64,000 nucleotides of DNA from Adineta vaga (taxonomy: Eukaryota; Animalia; Rotifera), in NCBI GenBank assembly GCA_021613535.1, contig CP075495.1, forward strand, positions 11,966,001 through 12,030,000, written 5' to 3'. Each line of letters opens with the position of its first letter. Within the stretch, counting starts at the first letter, position 1. This document shows, piece by piece, positions 2,255 through 48,467 of the stretch. Position numbers and translations under genes: made by a program. A model generated the notes under the pieces. That model was not told the origin of the DNA, did not search any database, and saw only the letters and a list, made by a program, of their open reading frames with translations.

Positions 2255-4890
2255 TTACGGTGATAAATGATCATTTAATGGCGATTGAGAATTTGAATCA
2301 TCACCATGACTTGATTCATCATGATTTAAAATCGGTTCTTGTTTAACAAAACGTTTTGGTGAACTATTTCCATTGATATTATTTGCAAATGGTACCATAC
2401 GACTCATTATAGCACGATAGGCAGCCATTTGAGGATCTAATAGTGATGCAGGCGTATCAAAACAATCAATATCTACAAGTGATACAGAAGATTTCTGTTG
2501 TTGATAATGATGACGGATATGTATATCATCATCACCATTGATATTTTCATAATCATTCATTAACATTGTTGATGGATGATTATTACTGTTATTATTTGAT
2601 ATATTCAGAGGTATGGAATCTTCTTGTGATGATACTAGAATGAAAGAAAATGGAGATTGATTTTTATTTGATAAATACTGAATAGTATTATACCTCGTTG
2701 ACTTTTCGCCATTTTTCGTTTATTTTGAAACCAATGTGTAACAATAGCATCAGTGACACGATCACGTTCATTTAATAATTCATTTGTTCCATCAGTACGA
2801 CTTCGTGCTTCATTACAGATACGAGCTAGATCTTCACGTCGACGTGGATCAGGATATGGATTATCAATGAAAGCTTTTTCGAGAATCTAAATATGATGAA
2901 AAATTCTCGTCTATTTTTCTTTCTTTCTTTCAGAATGATTTTGTTTTACATCAAGATGTTCAGGTCGAAAAGTAAATCGAGTACGTTTCGGTGCATCGAA
3001 TGAAACAGGTGATAAGTTATTATTTGATTGTGATTCAGCAAGACGAGGCACTTTCGTTGGTGGTTCACATGATGATGTTAAACTAGCAAGTAATTCACTT
3101 GATGGTTGTGTACCACCTAAATACAAAATTCATATTTTCTATCAATTTAACTAATCAAAAAGAGAAGTCTTTAACAAGAAAAAGAAAAAGAAAGATGATA
3201 TTATTTCCTTCATTTAAATATGTAATGAACGTGTTTAAAATCGCTTTTTATTGCTTCATATATTCATAAATTGCTAATTAAAAACAAATTCGATTCATAA
3301 TGTACATATGATCAGTTAAAGATAAATATTCATATTTTCTTCTCATTTAATGATCACTTATGTTCGCCTTATCGATCGAATAAATATTTAATGAGAAAAA
3401 TAATTGATTACAATGGATATATTTCTTTTATATTTACCCATTGATTGAACAATTTTTTTATATCGTATATACCATCGACATATAGCCATACGACCATTTT
3501 CTGATAAATCAAATAAATCACCACGTAAAAATTTCGATACATAAGCTTGATTGACAGCTGAAATCAAAAGAAAGATTTTAATCGAAATGTCATTCTTTAA
3601 AAAACTATCTTTTCTAACCTGCCATTCGAGCGATTTGTGATTGTTTAAGATCATAACGATAGACGAAAACAGAGATTTCATTGTGAATTGCAGAGTCACC
3701 TTTTCTATTAATAAATAAATTCTTCACTTTCATAATCAAATCTATTATAAATATTGTTGAATTATTTTAAAATGTCAACTAGTACACTGCTTGCTTATAA
3801 ATTCCGTCTCGTTTGTTCAACACTATGATCTACTTATCATTTGAGTTTCATAAAATATTATTGAAATTTCAATTATTAAAAAACTCATTAAATAAATCTA
3901 TTTATTCTTTTCCTTTGTTAGACGTACGAGAAAAGATTATTTGAATCTTTTTTTTATTCAACATACGCTAGTAATTCTTGTAGTTCTCGAGCTTCTTCTT
4001 CAAGATCAGTTTGGGTTATTGTTTCATGTTGATTATTTAATGTAGTTGAATTTGTTTCATTAATACTAGTTTTCGTTGCTCGTAAATTAACATTCGATGA
4101 TGTCGAATGATGAATCTGTGATGAATGATAACCATTCGTCGATCTATTTGGTGTTAATCCATTAGTAATTTGACTATGAGTTCGTTTATTATTAGTATTA
4201 TTATTATTTGCTATCGATATTGATGACGGTGGAGATGTTTGTTGGGAATTTATTATAGATGGTGATACCGGATCAGTTAAGGAAACAAAAGTTGATGAAG
4301 ATGAATTATTAATAGAATAAGACGGAGGAGGTGCACTACTAAATAAATTTCCAAGTTCACGATCTAGTCGATCAAGTTCATCATAAGCTCGAATAATTTG
4401 TGTTTTGGTTAGATGACTATTACGTAAACGTCGTAGTAATTCCCACTGTTCAACAGATAACTGTAATGATGCTGGTGTTGTTAATGTTGATGCTGATGAT
4501 GATGATAACCCATCTCGACTATTCGATGATGCTTCCATCGTCATCATACAATATCTAGAAATGTCTAGAAATAGCAAGAAATATGATTTTTGTATTAAAG
4601 TAATCGGCGATTAACATGAATATGAGCTTCGTTTATTCGCACTTGATTTGCATATTCGAATATACATACATATATATGTATATATATCCGGTGAGAGTGA
4701 GAGTTATGTGAGAAGAGAGAAACGAAAGAGAGATAGGCCAAGTTTAATTGCCACTTCATATATAGATCTAATCGTATTGGCACGGACGTTTATATATACA
4801 TATTAGAATCAAAAAGTAATCTACTTTGGTTCGCTTACCTTGATTACTCGGAATTTTTTGTCTATCAATACTTCTCTCATCTTGTTCCAT
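2255..4890 (-). CDS. HMBOX1: HMBOX1/HNF1-class homeobox protein (about 7 exons)
   Basis: N-terminal LSVEQWELLRRLRNSHLTKTQIIRAYDELDRLD; POU-like IARMAGVNQAYVSKFLRG...ICRWY; atypical homeodomain KRTRFTFRPEHLDILEKAFIDNPYPDPRRREDLARICN...VTHWFQNKRK with the HNF1-type insertion. The putative first exon 4890-4839 (MEQDERS...) splices in phase to 4564. Confidence 0.85.
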
Positions 4891-42100: not shown

Positions 42101-43639
42101 CGATTGGTTAACATGATTTTTGACAATCGTATAGTTAATTACTGAATGTATAATAATATCTAATTGTTATTCGTATTTATGGAAAAAAACCAGTGTGGGA
42201 AACATGAAGAAAAACAAAAGAAGCTGAAGAATGAGAGCTCTTTTTTATGTCAGTACTGAGTGTGTGAACACAATCAGACTGTGTGGATAGACTTTTTTTC
42301 TTCTTTCCGCGATGTATGCATTGATGGTAGTGCATGTTGTTACTCACGGTCGTTGACCGTCGGGCAGCTGTTCGTACATTTGTTTCTTCCTCTTTTTTTC
42401 TCGTGCTCTCTGTTTTCTCTTTTTTTTACTATAGCATCATTTTAATTATGGATGGCAGAAGGACGCATACACACGCATAGAAGTGTCTTTAAGGATTGAA
42501 GAGAAGTAGAAGAAGAATAATAAAAATCCGTTTGACTACCGACTAGATTACATGTATGTAAGTTCACATAGAAGACATACACATATGTTTATTTACCGTT
42601 CAAGTAAATTTATGCCTTCAGCATGGCCATTTTTCTCCTTGTCAGAAACCCTGACAAACATTATAATAATAAACAAATAACAATAAATTGACTATAACTA
42701 CTATCGAGACAAAAAAAGAACAAAATTTTAAGGTCGATTGTTAATAATGAACTACCAAACGACATTCTCTATGTTAGTAGTTGACTGTTATAAGATATAA
42801 AAAAAAAAAGAAAAGAAAACTTTTTTCTTCTCCTTCTTTTTACTTTGGAGACGTTTTCTTCCGCTTCGTTCTCTATTATACATAATGAATATTGTCATCT
42901 ATCTGTAAAGAAACGATCAGAAAAAAAGGTACGTTTACATACTCATTTAATGTTCGAATAAGCAAACGTTGACTTTCTTCTTTGATACGAAATTGTTTAT
43001 TTTCAAATGATAATGGTTGAACAAAGTCCCAAATACGCTAAAATAGAAATTTCGTTCTTATAAATCAATTTCATGGAATACATTAATACTTGAGGCGTGA
43101 ATTTTCTCATTAATTTTAATAAAAGTTGACTAGCTGCTTCTCGAACCTAAATAACATAAATAAAACATTTTTCTTTTAAATTTTCAATCATCTATTTACT
43201 TGATCTTTTCCATCACCTAGTCGATCGACTGTCACAGTGACCACTAGAACAGATGAATATAAAAATTCATGAATTTTTCTTTTAAAATCTATACCATTGT
43301 CAAGATAAGGTTCAAATTCATGAGAATCGAATCGTTCAATTAATAATTCTAATATCCGAAGACCATTACAAGAAATCTAAATGAAATATTTCATCAATAA
43401 TTGATATAATTCAATCTGACAGAAACTAATCATACTCGATAATTACTGCCTTCAATCCATTTTAATAAACCTTTGATAAAACCAGTTAAATCTTCACAAT
43501 TTGTGGAATTATGTACATTAGATAAATAAATTTCCAAGTGAGGAAAACATTCTAATCGAACACTTGGTTCTTTAGATGTAACATTTGAATAGAATTGATC
43601 AAGAGTTTTATTTTCATATATTGCTGACTTATATGCCAT
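33104..43639 (-). CDS. CLASP: CLIP-associating protein (CLASP/Orbit), many exons
   Basis: TOG/HEAT exons (DRLGDGKDQVRE; DWEKRVEAL; VKDLRSQIVREACITLAYMS; GLSDADADARSHAR), SxIP-type and SQPGSRSTSP motifs, and the C-terminus SSVRKAAVFCLVSIY...LKLLNVYISKAQ. Confidence 0.95.
41668..41697. repeat. (GGTGAT)5 intronic tandem repeat
   Basis: Read directly from the sequence. Confidence 0.85.
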
Positions 43640-44315
43640 CTATCTTTCTTTCTATATAACAAGATGTAATAATAACCAAGAAAAAACCAAATCAAACCAA
43701 AAAACTAAATCTATCTGTATCTGTATATATATTGCATTGAATACTTCTGTAAACAAAGACAAAATAGAACGAAACTTAGAACCAAACAAATAGAAAGAAA
43801 GAAAGAAAAAGAAAAAAAGACAATCAATTTAAAGATTTGTTAGTCATTTCAGACAGAAGAATTCTGTTTTTTAAATTCTCATTGGATCAATCGTTATACC
43901 AATAGAAATCATTTTATCTCTTATATTATATTAGATAAAACATGTTTATCAATTCTAAACAAAGATCTTCGAAGAAGTACGAGAATTTTTTTCAATTCTA
44001 TTGTCTTCAAACATACATTATGTATCAGATGTCGCTTGTTAAAATAAGATCTTTTAACCGCAACTTCTAGTTAATGAAAGAATGTAATTTGTATTATTAT
44101 TTTAACATTTATTCTTATCTCTAGTATCGAGTCCGGAAATAAGTTTGTTTGCTTGAGTAAATATTGTATGCATCGATTCGAAAACTAGTATTTCCGACTT
44201 TAAAAGAATATATTTTATTTAAAAAAATATATATATATATATTGAACTAAAATCCTATTGCAGAAATAGATATTTTGACGCAGAAATAAAAGAAAAAAAT
44301 ACTTGGAGAAGAGAT

Positions 44316-44795
44316 TTAATTTGTCGTTTTAATATTTCGTTTTAAATAAGCTTCAAATGATGGAACAATACGTTGGTAAGTACTCGCCATATATGGTGAT
44401 GTAAGAAGAAAATCAGCAGTTGATATATTACATGCCATTGGAATGTTCCATACACTTGCTAAACGTGTTAATGCTCGAACATCAGAATCATGTGGATGAG
44501 CTTCAAGTGGATCAGAAAGAAAAATAAGCATATCAATACATTGTTCAGCAATTTTTGCTCCAAGTTGTTGATCACCACCTAATGGACCTGATTTGTATCT
44601 GATTACTGGAATCTGTAAGACTGATTCAATTAAAGAGCCGGTTGTACCAGTTGCATGAAGTTCATGTTTAAGCAATTGATCACGATTTCGTTTGACCCAT
44701 TCAATTAATTCTTGTTTTTTATTATCATGAGCAACGAGAGCAATACGTTTTCGTTGTCCAATTTCAAATGATTGAGATTGTTCTTCAGATGTCAT
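44316..44795 (-). CDS. mgsA: Methylglyoxal synthase (bacterial type), intronless CDS
   Basis: [34 protein letters not shown]...[24 protein letters not shown]: the MGS active-site motifs are all intact. Confidence 0.96.
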
Positions 44796-44934
44796 TATTG
44801 ACTATGAGATATCTAAAAAGTCAAAAAGAAGTAAAGGATTTCTCAGGAGATTCATTCAATCGTTGTGTAGTTTTATCAATTCCGATGTAAGTTGAAGTCT
44901 TGCTAGATTAAACAAAAATTTTTTGAAGAGACAA

Positions 44935-45183
44935 TTAGGTTCGTTCAGATTTTGATCGACGTTTTAAGATATATTGTCCCATAGGACTATCAGCTAAAAC
45001 AAAACCGAGTACAGCACCAATTCCAGCACCAGCGATAAATCCAAATGAAAATCGAAATAAACCTTTATACATATTTAATAGTCCAACAAGAACAACTGAT
45101 CCAATAACAATATATTGTGTTGGAATTAAAGATGAAAATGAAAATCGTTTCGATGGAGGAGCATTTTCTGAATTTTGAACCAT
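44935..45183 (-). CDS. Small (82 aa) membrane protein with a glycine zipper
   Basis: Intact ATG ORF with two hydrophobic segments, GFIAGAGIGAVLG and a basic C-tail; TTTCAG acceptor just upstream. Confidence 0.7.
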   Translation of the reverse strand: MVQNSENAPPSKRFSFSSLIPTQYIVIGSVVLVGLLNMYKGLFRFSFGFIAGAGIGAVLGFVLADSPMGQYILKRRSKSERT

Positions 45184-45304
45184 TCTAATTCTATCTGAAA
45201 CTAGATTATAAATACAAAAAGATTTATCTTTTGTATATGAATAGAAGTAGGTAAGGTTTTATTAAAAAGACGGAAGCTAAAGAACTTAAATATTCAAGAA
45301 TAAA

Positions 45305-46611
45305 TCAATCAAGTGTTAATCTATTAAATGAATGATGTTGTTGATGACTATCGCGAACTTTTCTTAATGCTTCAAGAAAATCAGTGCGTGTAATCGGTCT
45401 TAAATGTGATAGATGATCTTCGTCACTTGTTGTTGAAGTTTGATTACACAATTCGACAATACGTTGCATGGCTGCTTGTCGACAGATTTCATTAATATCA
45501 CTACCTGTATAATTCGTTGTTTGTTGTGCTAATTCTTGTAGATCAACATCTGTATCAAGATTTTCATTATTTAAAATTAATTCGAAGATTTTAACACGTT
45601 GATTTATATTTGGTGATTGAATATGATAACGTGTTGGCATACGACGAAGTATAGCTGCATCTAAATCTTGTGCACGATTCGTTGCACCAATAATAAGAAC
45701 ACGATTTGATGATGAATCACCATCATCTGTTTCTAAACCATCCCAAAGTGTCATAAATTGAGTTTTGACCTCGAAAAAAAGAAGAAGAAAATGAAATTAG
45801 TGAAGTGTTCTTTGATGCGAATGCTTTCTTCATACCATTCGTGTGCATTCATGATCATCATTTTGACGTGTACGCATAAATGAATCAATTTCATCAATGA
45901 AAATAATAGTTGGTTGAAGCTTTTTAGCTAAAGAAAATATTGCAGCTGTACGTTTTTGTGATTCACCATACCATTTGTCTAACAACGATGTTACCTGAAA
46001 GAAATAAGATTTGAAAGCATATTCATGTATATCATCTCCTTCTGCTCAATTAATTTCTCTATATACAAATATCAACATACTTGAAGATTAATAAAGTTAG
46101 CTCCTGCTTCTCGAGCAATAGCTTTCGCTAGCATTGTCTTTCCACAACCTGGTGGTCCATAAAGTAGCACCCCTTTGGGTGTTGTTAATAATTTTGAATG
46201 AGAAAATAATTCCGGATGTTGTAATGGATAGATGACAGTTTGTCTAATATTATCAATAGTTTCATCTAAACCTCCGATATCTTGCCAAGTTACTTTAATG
46301 TCTTCAGGATTAATCAAATCGGCTAGTAGACACATTTCATATTCATTGAAATTATTTACAAGTGCTTTTGGTAAATTCATTTTTTTGGAAATAATTTCTG
46401 CTAATTCTTTTTGACGTTTTTTTTCTTCGTGAGTAGGATCTAGATGTTTCATTGCATAACGGATAAGTAGATAGCTAAAAACCATGGAACCAACTAATGC
46501 TAGAGTACGTGTTCCTAATGATAAAATCATTGAACGAACTTGTGGATCTTTTAGATTGATTACACGTGATGTTTGAGTTAGATCCTGAACGATCTTTGAT
46601 GGTACAACCAT
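45305..46611 (-). CDS. ATAD1: AAA+ ATPase ATAD1/Msp1, 3 exons
   Basis: N-terminal TM then LDP; [22 protein letters not shown]; Walker A GPPGCGKT; DKWYGESQK; Walker B IFIDEIDS; QFMTLWDGL; [18 protein letters not shown]. Confidence 0.95.
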
Positions 46612-46739
46612 TTCTAGTTGTTCTTTTTCTTTTCTAGAATGAAAATAAATCTTTTTTTTTTGTCTTGTTTACTATATTTTGATACAGATAAAATAACTTT
46701 ATTTTAAACAAAAATATTAACAAAACAAAAAGAACTTAT

Positions 46740-47590
46740 TACTACCAAGTTAATCCAGTATTTGCTAAGCGTCGTAGACGTCTAAAAAAAGATTCAATTA
46801 AAGTATTCCTTCTCATATAATCTGCATTGTACCTCGTATTACACTATGTGGAAATGTTTTATGATGCCAACTGAGTTGTTCACGAACGATATAGGCAATT
46901 ACTGTGACAAAATTCACCACCCAGATCTTATATAGCATATATCTTTCAATGTTTGTTCTTCAAATGTGTATTGAATATGTCCCATTCGAATTGATCAACC
47001 AAACTTACATTGTCAATCAGTATATTTAACTAAAATAGTAATATGATAATGTAAAATATTAACGATGAAATATATATTAAACTATCGAATAATATTTCAT
47101 GTGAATATGATTAAGCACTTGATTCATGAAAGAAAACAATCAAGGCTATAGTTCTTCATTTGATTATCGTGTTACTTTCTTTTAATACTCTAGTACAATA
47201 GATATAAATACAGATCGATATTTCATCGCTTACTTTAATTGTCACGCGTTGATCAATAGTATCAGTTGATAGATGATTCTGATGAGTATCGATTGCGCAA
47301 TAGCTGGTACAAATGTAATAGGATTTAAATCTAAATCTAATCAAATAGCTACAAGATCCTCAGATTGTTGAACATTTTCAAAAGCACGTGAATCATCCAC
47401 ATAATCAAAGTTATCAAGCGAAAAACTAATAGTAAAATATAGAATTGAATATCTTGTACCATAAAGGAAAGTTTTTCTTCTTAGCAATTGCTGTTCGATT
47501 GCGATTAATCGATATTGCTGATGGAATAGCATGGAGATTATGAGAATCTATCGGTAACCATATTGATGGTTTTGATTTATCTCTACAGTA
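46740..47590 (-). pseudogene. Possible decayed multi-exon gene, unidentified
   Basis: Exon-like blocks bounded by ag/gt (SIWLPIDSHNLHAIPSAISINRNR..; FSLDNFDYVDDSRAFENV..*; WVVNFVTVIAYIVREQLSWHHKTFPH) that do not join into one frame. Confidence 0.3.
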
Positions 47591-48467
47591 AGAAAAATAA
47601 TAACTGTTTCTTTTATCGTTTCATAAAGTTTTTCTTACGATCATATTGTAATCGATTCTGTATTCATTGTTCAGTGATTAAGTTCATGCAATCTTACTAA
47701 ACAAAATAAAACGTGATTATCAAACTGGAGATTTTTCGTAAAATACTCCGTGAAGTAAACATAGATGACTACCAATCTACCTCGAAAAAAGAACGACGAA
47801 TAGAACAGAACAGAAACAAAAAACATTCGTAAATATGTTATAGACATACACATACACAGTATGGAAGAATGCAATAATGGATTCACGTCTTTTTGTATTG
47901 ATTTTTACTCTAATTGTTCAAGAATTTCATAGAAGATCAAAGAAAGAAACTGAGAATATCGTGAAGAAATTGTACTTACTTTTGATTTAAATTCATTTAT
48001 CGTGTTGTCAGGAAATTGAGATTGAACAACATATACATAAGAAGGTTCTGTGATTTGATTGGTGTCATTGGCAGCATCTTTGACTGATCAGTGGATAAAA
48101 ATCCAATCGAAGTTCTATGGCAATTTATAAAGAAATCTAGAAGATAAAAATGTATCCAATAGAAGATTATCTTGAGCTTTCATTTATAGAAACTGATGTG
48201 TATATTTTTTGTGAATAGATATATGGATAAATAAACAATTATGTCCGTTCAGATTTGCAATGAATGCTAGACGAACTGCATTACATTACATTACATATAT
48301 GTATTTGCGTTGCGTACGAAAAGAGAAGAGCATAGTAAAGACTATTCAGATTGGTTAAAATATTAGAAACTAATAAAAATCTATTACCATTATAGATGTC
48401 GTCATTTTTTTGTCTGATTTTTCCAAACTTCAAAACAACTTTATTCATAAAAACATAACAAAATATA

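What the first reader, a model, noticed from the sequence alone, without database searches (positions are those of the whole stretch)
44316..46640. Candidate trans-spliced operon ATAD1 - small TM protein - mgsA: a foreign gene possibly expressed from a host housekeeping transcript
Three co-oriented CDSs are separated by only 121 and 139 nt, leaving little room for a 3'UTR plus promoter. Each ATG is preceded within about 10-20 nt by a pyrimidine-rich AG acceptor (CATTCTAG, AGTTTCAG, CTTTTTAG), and the two short gaps have no strong donor. The ATAD1 gap reads AATAAA, U-rich tract, TTTCAG, like nematode operon spacers. SL trans-splicing is known in bdelloid rotifers. Inference: landing downstream in a polycistronic unit would give an HGT gene immediate expression, a possible general domestication route.
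Basis: inference. Interest (0 to 1): 0.8.

Follow-up and report, generated by a model that had tools for sequence, protein, structure and literature searches.

The report
Rotifer operon candidate ending in bacterial gene
In a bdelloid rotifer genome, a bacterial-derived methylglyoxal synthase gene sits last in a tightly packed, conserved row of host genes, and RNA data show it on one RNA with its upstream neighbour behind a spliced leader. This fits an operon, a layout not yet described for rotifers, but it does not show that the operon is how the foreign gene first became expressed.

Summary
On the minus strand, ATAD1/Msp1, an 82-aa membrane protein (TM82) and methylglyoxal synthase (mgsA) lie 121 and 139 nt apart, each ATG behind a pyrimidine-rich AG. 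SNF5 lies 130 nt upstream on the same strand.

RNA contigs from four studies show:
- **One RNA for two genes.** A single contig (44293-45202) carries TM82, the 139-nt gap and mgsA.
- **Spliced leader on TM82.** The contig's 5' end carries the 3' part of the bdelloid spliced leader, joined at AG 45202/45201.
- **ATAD1 tail at the same site.** In one run the ATAD1 poly(A) tail starts right after 45201, the same AG.
- **Read-through from SNF5.** SNF5 RNA runs across the ATAD1 acceptor in one run.

The order SNF5>ATAD1>TM82>mgsA>CLASP is kept in Adineta steineri and Rotaria magnacalcarata. The best reading is a spliced-leader operon with a Ciona-like junction (confidence 0.55).

Not shown: a leader on mgsA at 44813, single molecules spanning the genes, or one promoter.

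The "landing in an operon" inference is weak. The A. vaga ohnologue keeps mgsA inverted and alone, and Didymodactylos has it alone.

This scan already holds 43 operon-candidate notes on other DNA of this genome. The papers I searched report no rotifer operons.

The parts
46742..48102 (-). SNF5/SMARCB1 gene, candidate first gene of the unit. Its 5' exon starts near 48102 and not at an AG; its stop is at 46744-46742.
   Evidence: The C-terminus reads RLRRLANTGLTW* in the sequence. Pfam INI1_DNA-bd and SNF5 hit the orthologous gene models. The 5' sequence is.
46612..46741 (-). SNF5-ATAD1 spacer of 130 nt. It holds AATAAA at 46703-46698 and the acceptor cattctAG with AG at 46635-46634.
   Evidence: ATAD1 contigs of X1, X18 and X19 all start exactly at 46635. 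An X5 contig runs from the last SNF5 exons across the acceptor to 46624. The acceptor is conserved in A. steineri, Rotaria and L029.
45305..46611 (-). ATAD1/Msp1 CDS. Exons are 46611-46078, 45991-45834 and 45767-45305; introns are 86 and 66 nt.
   Evidence: Pfam AAA and AAA_lid_3. PDB ATAD1 at 133 bits for exon 3, and alignment of residues 37-177 for exon 1. Both introns are spliced out in four runs. Single copy in the genome.
45201..45304 (-). ATAD1 3' UTR, which also serves as the outron of TM82. AATAAA lies at 45263-45258. In three runs the contigs end at 45257. In X5 a poly(A) tail is added right after 45201.
   Evidence: the X5 contig 45201-46587 has a loose end of adapter plus T15 before 45201. 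The next templated bases are TTTCAG, so internal priming on an A-run is excluded.
45195..45202 (-). Tandem acceptors AG|TTTCAG. The spliced leader is joined at AG 45202-45201, so the exon starts at 45200, 17 nt before the TM82 ATG.
   Evidence: X18 has the loose end CTTGGTAAG behind 45202, which is the reverse complement of CTTACCAAG. X1 has 4 unlaid letters at the same place. ACAACTTACCAAGAG followed by GT occurs 44 times in this genome against 0 in the control, which marks SL RNA genes.
44935..45183 (-). TM82, an 82-aa two-helix membrane protein of an orphan family found only in bdelloid-type sequences.
   Evidence: 40 homologues at 60-82% identity, among them Adineta and Rotaria. dN/dS is 0.07-0.29. 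No Pfam or NCBIfam match. A profile search of 1.84 billion proteins found only this family.
44796..44934 (-). TM82-mgsA spacer of 139 nt with the conserved acceptor-like ctttttAG (AG at 44814-44813). It is fully covered by RNA contigs.
   Evidence: Contigs 44293-45202 (X1, X18), 44293-45175 (X19) and 44293-45092 (X5) cross it without a joint or a break. The acceptor motif is kept in every fetched lineage.
44316..44795 (-). mgsA, an intron-less methylglyoxal synthase of bacterial type, fully adapted in base composition (GC3 0.12).
   Evidence: NCBIfam equivalogs at 208 and 184 bits. PDB 6phe at 185 bits. The nearest non-bdelloid relatives are bacterial at 58-68% identity.
44293..44320 (-). mgsA 3' end. 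ATTAAA (44320-44315) overlaps the stop codon, and the RNA contigs of all four runs end at 44293.
43831..44184 (-). RNA-silent spacer between the end of the unit and the CLASP gene (5' end about 43731-43777, ATG at 43639).
   Evidence: Depth is zero in all four runs. The first CLASP exon is conserved in the relatives.

Best explanation
SNF5 > ATAD1 > TM82 > mgsA is a conserved head-to-tail gene unit of bdelloid rotifers that behaves like a spliced-leader operon.

Proposed course of events:
- Transcription reads through from an upstream gene (inferred).
- The precursor is cut into messages by adding the 23-nt bdelloid spliced leader at an AG a few bases before each downstream ATG. This is shown for TM82. 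It is consistent for ATAD1 and only inferred for mgsA.
- The upstream message is polyadenylated. At the ATAD1|TM82 junction the distal poly(A) site and the leader acceptor are the same nucleotide (shown in one run). This is a zero-length spacer of the Ciona type.
- TM82 and the bacterial-derived mgsA persist together on an assembled RNA running from 45202 to 44293 (shown in four studies).

mgsA is most likely translated from a further leader-capped, monocistronic form made at the conserved acceptor 44814/44813. Five AUGs and an 82-codon ORF precede its start on the two-gene RNA (inferred).
For: - **Layout.** Gaps are 130, 121 and 139 nt on one strand.
- **Leader on TM82.** The 3' end of the leader is joined at AG 45202/45201. 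The leader's identity was checked against 44 genomic SL RNA gene copies.
- **Shared junction.** The ATAD1 poly(A) tail starts right after 45201 in X5, and there is no templated A-run there.
- **ATAD1 5' end.** ATAD1 contigs begin exactly at acceptor AG 46635 in three runs. An X5 contig runs from spliced SNF5 exons past its AATAAA and across that acceptor.
- **One contig for TM82, gap and mgsA** in four independent studies.
- **Not genomic DNA.** Introns are removed in the same contigs, and a 354-nt silent stretch follows the unit.
- **Conserved order and gap lengths.** The order is kept in Adineta steineri and Rotaria magnacalcarata. Two unnamed bdelloid contigs cover part of the cluster: L028 (ATAD1 3' end, TM82, start of mgsA) and L029 (SNF5 3' end, ATAD1, TM82, start of mgsA). 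The ATAD1-TM82 gap is 111-122 nt in the three annotated loci.
- **Conserved acceptors** before all three ATGs.
- **TM82 is a real coding gene**.
- **Upstream AUGs.** Five AUGs precede the mgsA AUG.
Against: - Only assembled contigs were available, not reads. The tool warns that a contig across two genes does not show a single transcript.
- No leader letters were seen at 46635 or at 44813.
- The poly(A)-at-acceptor observation rests on one contig of one run. In three runs the ATAD1 contig ends at 45257, leaving 45203-45256 uncovered.
- Contig depths differ between genes (ATAD1 above TM82-mgsA above SNF5). One promoter does not predict this, although RNA stability could explain it.
- No TSS or promoter data exist.
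- mgsA can evidently survive outside the unit (A. vaga ohnologue, D. carnosus).
Confidence: 0.55

Rival explanations
1. These are compact but independent genes. Each gene has its own promoter embedded in the 3' part of its upstream neighbour. Transcripts overlap, and the spliced leader merely trims each outron. The unbroken contigs are overlaps of separate transcripts.
For: - The genome is compact and leader use is common in bdelloids, independent of operons (Wenzel 2021, PMC7986045, states that no operons are reported for rotifers).
- Contig depths differ 2-3 fold between ATAD1 and TM82-mgsA and are lower for SNF5.
- The ATAD1-TM82 gap is uncovered in three of four runs.
- mgsA stands alone in the ohnologue and in D. 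carnosus.
Against: - The TM82 acceptor lies inside the ATAD1 3' UTR, and the poly(A) site coincides with it to the nucleotide. That is unlikely by chance in a ~100-nt gap.
- Order and short gap lengths are kept between Adineta and Rotaria although the gap sequences have diverged.
- In the ohnologue ATAD1 and TM82 are both absent, as if lost as a unit.
Confidence: 0.3
2. TM82-mgsA is a stable, mature two-gene mRNA. No leader is added at 44813, and mgsA is translated by reinitiation or internal entry, or is barely translated from this locus.
For: - The TM82-gap-mgsA path is assembled as one contig in 4 of 4 runs, with no break at 44813. The ATAD1-TM82 colinear path is too rare to assemble in 3 of 4 runs.
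- The A. vaga gap has no canonical AATAAA for TM82.
Against: - An acceptor-like (T)nAG before the mgsA ATG is kept in all lineages, including Rotaria with its 369-nt gap.
- Five upstream AUGs and an 82-codon ORF make downstream initiation inefficient.
- Assemblers clip short leader tips, so the absence of a leader contig says little.
Confidence: 0.2
3. One reading: the bacterial mgsA landed downstream in an already existing polycistronic unit and was expressed at once from the host transcript. This would be a general domestication route.
For: - mgsA is the last gene of the conserved unit and shares an RNA with TM82.
- The idea that leader trans-splicing eases expression of transferred genes, naming rotifers, is published (Matsuo 2018, PMC6053224).
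Against: - The transfer is old and mgsA is fully adapted (GC3 0.12).
- D. carnosus has mgsA without ATAD1, TM82 or CLASP within 10 kb.
- A second old mgsA lineage (A. vaga contig 5 type, 18 members in a quick tree) sits inverted and alone in A. vaga.
- A third paralogue lies elsewhere.
- The landing site cannot be reconstructed from this locus.
Confidence: 0.12
4. This is an artefact: the contigs are chimeric, or they derive from genomic DNA in the RNA libraries.
For: All runs were labelled as RNA only by a guess, and only contigs were available.
Against: - The same contigs lack both ATAD1 introns and the SNF5 and CLASP introns.
- 43831-44184 has zero depth in all four runs.
- Non-templated leader and poly(A) letters are present.
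- Four different studies agree.
Confidence: 0.03

Closest known systems
Ciona / Oikopleura (tunicate) spliced-leader operons
   Same: - Short or absent intercistronic region.
- A single leader type serves both first and downstream genes.
- The upstream poly(A) site sits directly at the downstream trans-splice acceptor, as seen here at 45201/45202.

The description of the tunicate systems is from established knowledge, not tested here.
   Different: - A different phylum with an unrelated leader.
- Here ATAD1 also appears to end earlier, at 45257, so the junction is not always zero-length.
- Co-transcription is not proven.
- The last gene is of bacterial origin.
Caenorhabditis elegans operons (SL2-resolved)
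   Same: Co-oriented unrelated housekeeping genes about 100-150 nt apart, with AATAAA, then a U-rich spacer, then an acceptor. Downstream genes receive a spliced leader.
   Different: No specialised second leader is known or seen here. The 11 visible letters match the ordinary bdelloid leader. The AATAAA-to-acceptor distance is about 55-60 nt.
Chaetognath operons (Paraspadella gotoi, Nature 2025, PMC12460157)
   Same: A gnathiferan relative in which 18% of genes are in leader-resolved operons. Those operons were defined as same-strand genes less than 250 bp apart with at least one leader-bearing gene, and no operon-specific leader was found.
   Different: That paper only lists rotifers in passing among lineages with trans-splicing and operonic transcription. 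It documents no rotifer operon.
Leader trans-splicing as an aid to functional gene transfer (Paulinella micropora, Matsuo 2018, PMC6053224)
   Same: Rotifers are cited as a leader-using organism rich in foreign genes.
   Different: The published idea concerns insertion into 5' UTRs, not joining an operon as its last cistron. No rotifer locus was analysed.
Bacterial methylglyoxal synthase (MgsA; PDB 6phe, 1b93)
   Same: Full-length equivalog. The motifs VAHDx[15 protein letters not shown] and DPxxxxPHDxD are visible in the alignment.
   Different: It is encoded in an animal nucleus with host-like base composition, lies behind a splice-acceptor motif, and uses an ATTAAA poly(A) signal that overlaps the stop codon.

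Membership tests
Spliced-leader-resolved metazoan operon | Two or more same-strand genes with very short intergenic distances | tested here: met
   Gaps are 130, 121 and 139 nt. The next gap, to CLASP, is 676 nt and includes an RNA-silent stretch.
Spliced-leader-resolved metazoan operon | Downstream genes' mRNAs carry the spliced leader at an acceptor just upstream of the ATG | tested here: inconclusive
   Met for TM82: leader letters are joined at 45202/45201. ATAD1 contigs stop exactly at acceptor AG 46635, but no leader letters are seen. For mgsA no leader is seen; only a conserved acceptor motif is present.
Spliced-leader-resolved metazoan operon | A polycistronic precursor: single RNA molecules spanning the intercistronic regions | tested here: inconclusive
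   Contigs span TM82-mgsA in 4 runs and SNF5 to the ATAD1 acceptor in 1 run, and the ATAD1 3' UTR reaches the TM82 acceptor in 1 run. Contigs do not prove single molecules.
Spliced-leader-resolved metazoan operon | One promoter upstream of the first gene and no internal capped TSS | not testable with these tools
   No CAGE, TSS or chromatin data could be reached. The SNF5 5' end (about 48102) is not at an AG, as expected of a first gene.
Spliced-leader-resolved metazoan operon | Gene order and tight spacing conserved among relatives | tested here: met
   The same order is found in A. steineri (two assemblies) and R. magnacalcarata (three assemblies), and in part in two unnamed bdelloid contigs. 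It is broken in the A. vaga ohnologue and absent around the D. carnosus mgsA.
Methylglyoxal synthase (MgsA, TIGR00160 / NF003559) | Full-length match above the curated equivalog cut-offs | tested here: met
   208.6 bits against a cut-off of 84, and 184.3 bits against a cut-off of 146.9. PDB methylglyoxal synthases score up to 185 bits.
Horizontally acquired gene of bacterial origin | Nearest relatives outside the host clade are bacterial, with none from other animals | tested here: met
   The best 66 hits are bdelloid-type, and the following ones are bacterial at 58-68% identity. No other eukaryote appears among the 120 listed. In the quick tree the non-Didymodactylos bdelloid sequences form one clade next to a bacterial clade, and D. 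carnosus is unresolved.
ATAD1 / Msp1 membrane-protein extractase | One AAA domain plus lid, best matches to ATAD1/Msp1, and an N-terminal membrane anchor | tested here: met
   Pfam AAA and AAA_lid_3. Exon 3 scores 133 bits to ATAD1 (8vxt, 7upr) against about 92 bits for other AAA proteins. Exon 1 aligns to ATAD1 over residues 37-177. The hydrophobic stretch [18 protein letters not shown] is visible in the sequence. The protein was searched exon by exon, and the joined protein was not built.

The most novel reading that the evidence does not exclude
The upstream message is finished by the trans-splicing reaction itself. The free 3' end left at the AG when the leader is joined to TM82 would be polyadenylated directly to make the ATAD1 mRNA. 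In addition, the bacterial-derived mgsA would be expressed from a stable two-gene animal mRNA (leader-TM82-mgsA). It would be the first documented rotifer operon, with a foreign gene as its last cistron.
Probability: 0.2. Interest if true: 0.8.

Novelty: new member of a known kind. Interest (0 to 1): 0.58.

Why it matters
- **A gap in the literature.** Operons resolved by a spliced leader are known in nematodes, tunicates, flatworms and chaetognaths. A 2021 survey states that none has been reported for rotifers (PMC7986045).
- **Compact and directly testable.** The locus has a proven leader junction, a poly(A) site on the same nucleotide, and a two-gene RNA.
- **A foreign gene is involved.** The last gene is a bacterial enzyme, so the locus bears on how bdelloids, the animals richest in foreign genes, get such genes expressed.
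- **A built-in comparison.** The same foreign gene survives in the ohnologous region, inverted and without the upstream genes. Leader use, 5' ends and expression levels of the two copies can therefore be compared within one animal.

Tried and rejected
- **Exact-protein look-up of the window's own mgsA** to get transcript contigs: not on record.
- **Look-ups of short-contig homologues hoped to be transcripts** (L020, L021, L028, L029, L032). All look like genomic DNA: introns or flanks are present and no leader is seen. One had no DNA available.
- **Metagenome and metatranscriptome pattern scans.** I searched for the leader followed by the conserved mgsA motif. As a positive control I searched for the leader followed by the conserved TM82 motif. 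Both gave 0 hits, so the negative result for mgsA is uninformative.
- **Co-transfer of TM82 and mgsA as a bacterial gene pair.** The nearest named bacterial mgsA (a Nitrospirae MAG) has a divergent glycine-zipper gene upstream, but it shows no similarity to TM82 (E = 0.13 over 8 residues). Rejected.
- **A known family for TM82.** Pfam at E up to 10, NCBIfam, the ESM Atlas (best score 0.84, below meaning) and a full profile search of 1.84 billion proteins found only the bdelloid-type family and low-complexity noise. Mic10 was considered from memory but did not appear in the Pfam scan, so it was dropped.
- **The careful phylogeny did not finish.** Only the quick tree was used, and only for coarse grouping.
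Full report
**What is there**

The window is G000:C2:11966001-12030000 of a 100.8-Mb, six-contig genome. Its proteins are identical or nearly identical to Adineta vaga entries.

All the genes in question lie on the minus strand:
- **ATAD1/Msp1.** ATG at 46611, stop at 45305. It has three exons, and both introns are confirmed by RNA joints.
- **TM82.** An 82-aa membrane protein, 45183-44935.
- **mgsA.** An intron-less methylglyoxal synthase, 44795-44316.

Two additions matter. SNF5/SMARCB1 ends at 46742, only 130 nt upstream of ATAD1 on the same strand. The next gene downstream, CLASP (ATG at 43639), is 676 nt away.

**Identity of the genes**

- **mgsA** passes both NCBIfam methylglyoxal-synthase equivalog cut-offs and scores 185 bits to PDB 6phe. 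Its 66 best relatives are bdelloid-type: A. steineri, Rotaria species, D. carnosus and many environmental contigs. After these come bacteria at 58-68% identity, and no other eukaryote is listed. Its GC3 of 0.12 equals that of its neighbours. It is therefore an old, fully adapted acquisition.
- **ATAD1** was searched exon by exon; the joined model was not built. Exon 3 best matches the solved ATAD1 structures.
- **TM82** is a real gene. It has 40 homologues at 60-82% identity, an invariant NMYKGLFRFS-G core and dN/dS of 0.07-0.29. It has no relatives outside this family in Pfam, NCBIfam, the Atlas or a profile search of 1.84 billion proteins.

**RNA evidence**

The evidence comes from four runs of four studies. 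Only assembled contigs were available.

1. **One RNA for TM82 and mgsA.** One contig covers 44293-45202 in X1 and X18. X19 covers 44293-45175 and X5 covers 44293-45092. So TM82, the whole 139-nt gap and mgsA lie on one assembled RNA without a joint.
2. **Leader on TM82.** Behind 45202 the X18 contig continues with CTTGGTAAG, the reverse complement of CTTACCAAG. The string ACAACTTACCAAGAG followed by GT occurs 44 times in this genome and 0 times in the control, in clustered pairs typical of SL RNA genes. The bdelloid leader is therefore joined at AG 45202/45201, and the exon starts at 45200, 17 nt before the TM82 ATG.
3. **ATAD1 tail at the same AG.** In X5 the ATAD1 contig runs to 45201 and continues with an adapter plus T15, that is, a poly(A) tail added right after the same AG. 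The next templated bases are TTTCAG, so this is not internal priming. In the other three runs the ATAD1 contig ends at 45257, just after AATAAAA, and 45203-45256 is uncovered.
4. **ATAD1 5' end and SNF5 read-through.** ATAD1 contigs in three runs begin exactly at 46635, the AG of cattctAG. In X5 a contig that has the last SNF5 intron spliced out runs past the SNF5 stop and its AATAAA, and across that acceptor, to 46624.
5. **Not genomic DNA.** The stretch 43831-44184 has zero depth everywhere, and introns are absent from the contigs.

**Comparative evidence**

- **Conserved order.** The order TIR protein > SNF5 > ATAD1 > TM82 > mgsA > CLASP, all on one strand, is kept in A. steineri and Rotaria magnacalcarata. 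Two unnamed bdelloid contigs show parts of it.
- **Conserved spacing.** In these three annotated loci the ATAD1-TM82 gap is 111-122 nt, the SNF5-ATAD1 gap is 130-155 nt, and the TM82-mgsA gap is 139-152 nt, or 369 nt in Rotaria.
- **Conserved acceptors.** The gap sequences have diverged, yet an acceptor-like (T)nAG lies shortly before each ATG in every lineage.
- **Exceptions.** In D. carnosus mgsA has no ATAD1, TM82 or CLASP within the 10-kb locus. In A. vaga itself the ohnologous region on contig 5 has SNF5 and CLASP in the same relative order, but mgsA (81% identical and intact) lies inverted between them. ATAD1 and TM82 are absent there and are single-copy in the genome. A quick tree puts that copy in a separate clade of 18 sequences, so the split is old.

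**Mechanism**

- **Shown.** The TM82 message receives the leader at an acceptor that lies inside the ATAD1 3' UTR. An ATAD1 message ends at that very nucleotide. TM82 and mgsA share an assembled RNA.
- **What follows.** The precursor of TM82-mgsA must start upstream of 45202, inside or before ATAD1, so no promoter can sit in the 121-nt gap.
- **Inferred.** Read-through transcription runs from ATAD1 and probably from SNF5. The SNF5 5' end near 48102 is not at an AG, as expected of a first gene. The precursor is resolved by leader addition plus polyadenylation, with a Ciona-like zero-length junction.
- **mgsA.** The colinear TM82-mgsA RNA is abundant enough to assemble in every run. The colinear ATAD1-TM82 RNA is not. 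This suggests slow or partial processing at 44813. Five AUGs and an 82-codon ORF precede the mgsA AUG, and the acceptor is conserved. I therefore expect a leader-capped monocistronic mgsA form, but I could not see it. Assemblers clip such short tips, and both pattern scans of metagenome contigs were blank, including the TM82 positive control.

- That mgsA rides on a host transcript is supported for TM82-mgsA and plausible for the whole unit.
- That the gene landed in an operon and was thereby domesticated is not supported by the comparative data. mgsA exists alone in Didymodactylos and in the A. vaga ohnologue, and TM82 was found only in bdelloid-type sequences. The cluster may be younger than the transfer.
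- The concept itself has a precedent. Matsuo et al. 2018 proposed that leader trans-splicing eases functional gene transfer and named rotifers (PMC6053224).

**Novelty**

- Wenzel et al. [quoted passage not shown]
- The 2025 chaetognath genome paper only lists rotifers in passing (PMC12460157).
- My other literature searches found nothing on rotifer operons or on rotifer methylglyoxal synthase.
- This scan holds 43 notes on operon candidates elsewhere in this genome. Several follow-ups describe the same signature, a poly(A) site at the next gene's acceptor. These are not independent proof, but they show that the pattern recurs.
- I file the locus as a new member of a known kind, the spliced-leader operon, in a phylum where it is undocumented. 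Its special feature is a foreign last gene.

Noticed in passing
window 47029-48102 (minus strand): In three runs the SNF5 5' exon (48102-47980) is also joined to 47029. This skips 951 nt and most SNF5 coding exons, with one odd letter at the joint. The normal joint, with a 283-nt intron, is seen as well. It may be an exon-skipping isoform or an assembly artefact.
   Followed up: no
L002 (G000:C5:7659041-7662505): This is the ohnologous region. An intact mgsA (163 aa, 81% identical) lies inverted between SNF5 and CLASP. ATAD1 and TM82 are missing. An acceptor-like cattttAG sits directly before the ATG.
   Followed up: partly
L003 (G000:C5:15259560-15262967), ORF 1492-2085: A third, very divergent mgsA paralogue (53% identity, 197 aa, with a C-terminal extension) lies about 490 nt downstream of a co-oriented cytochrome-P450-like gene. 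It has a very long branch in the quick tree.
   Followed up: no
P0162 (252 aa, from the profile search): A TM82-like two-helix hairpin forms the C-terminal 62 residues of a larger protein with an unrelated N-terminal part. The module may therefore also serve as a membrane anchor.
   Followed up: no
window 46859-47011: Two allelic RNA contigs, with 3 and 6 differences from the reference, are present in three of the four runs; the listed X1 rows show only one. Both SNF5 haplotypes therefore appear to be expressed.
   Followed up: no
L018/L019 (Didymodactylos carnosus): The annotated mgsA gene model spans 1.6 kb for 156 aa, with a far-upstream first exon. The main ORF, 3668-4117, is a single exon in a gene-poor neighbourhood.
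   Followed up: partly
G000:C5:9884354-9925971 and other sites: SL RNA genes occur as head-to-head pairs about 165 nt apart, in clusters. The largest clusters are on contig 5.
   Followed up: no
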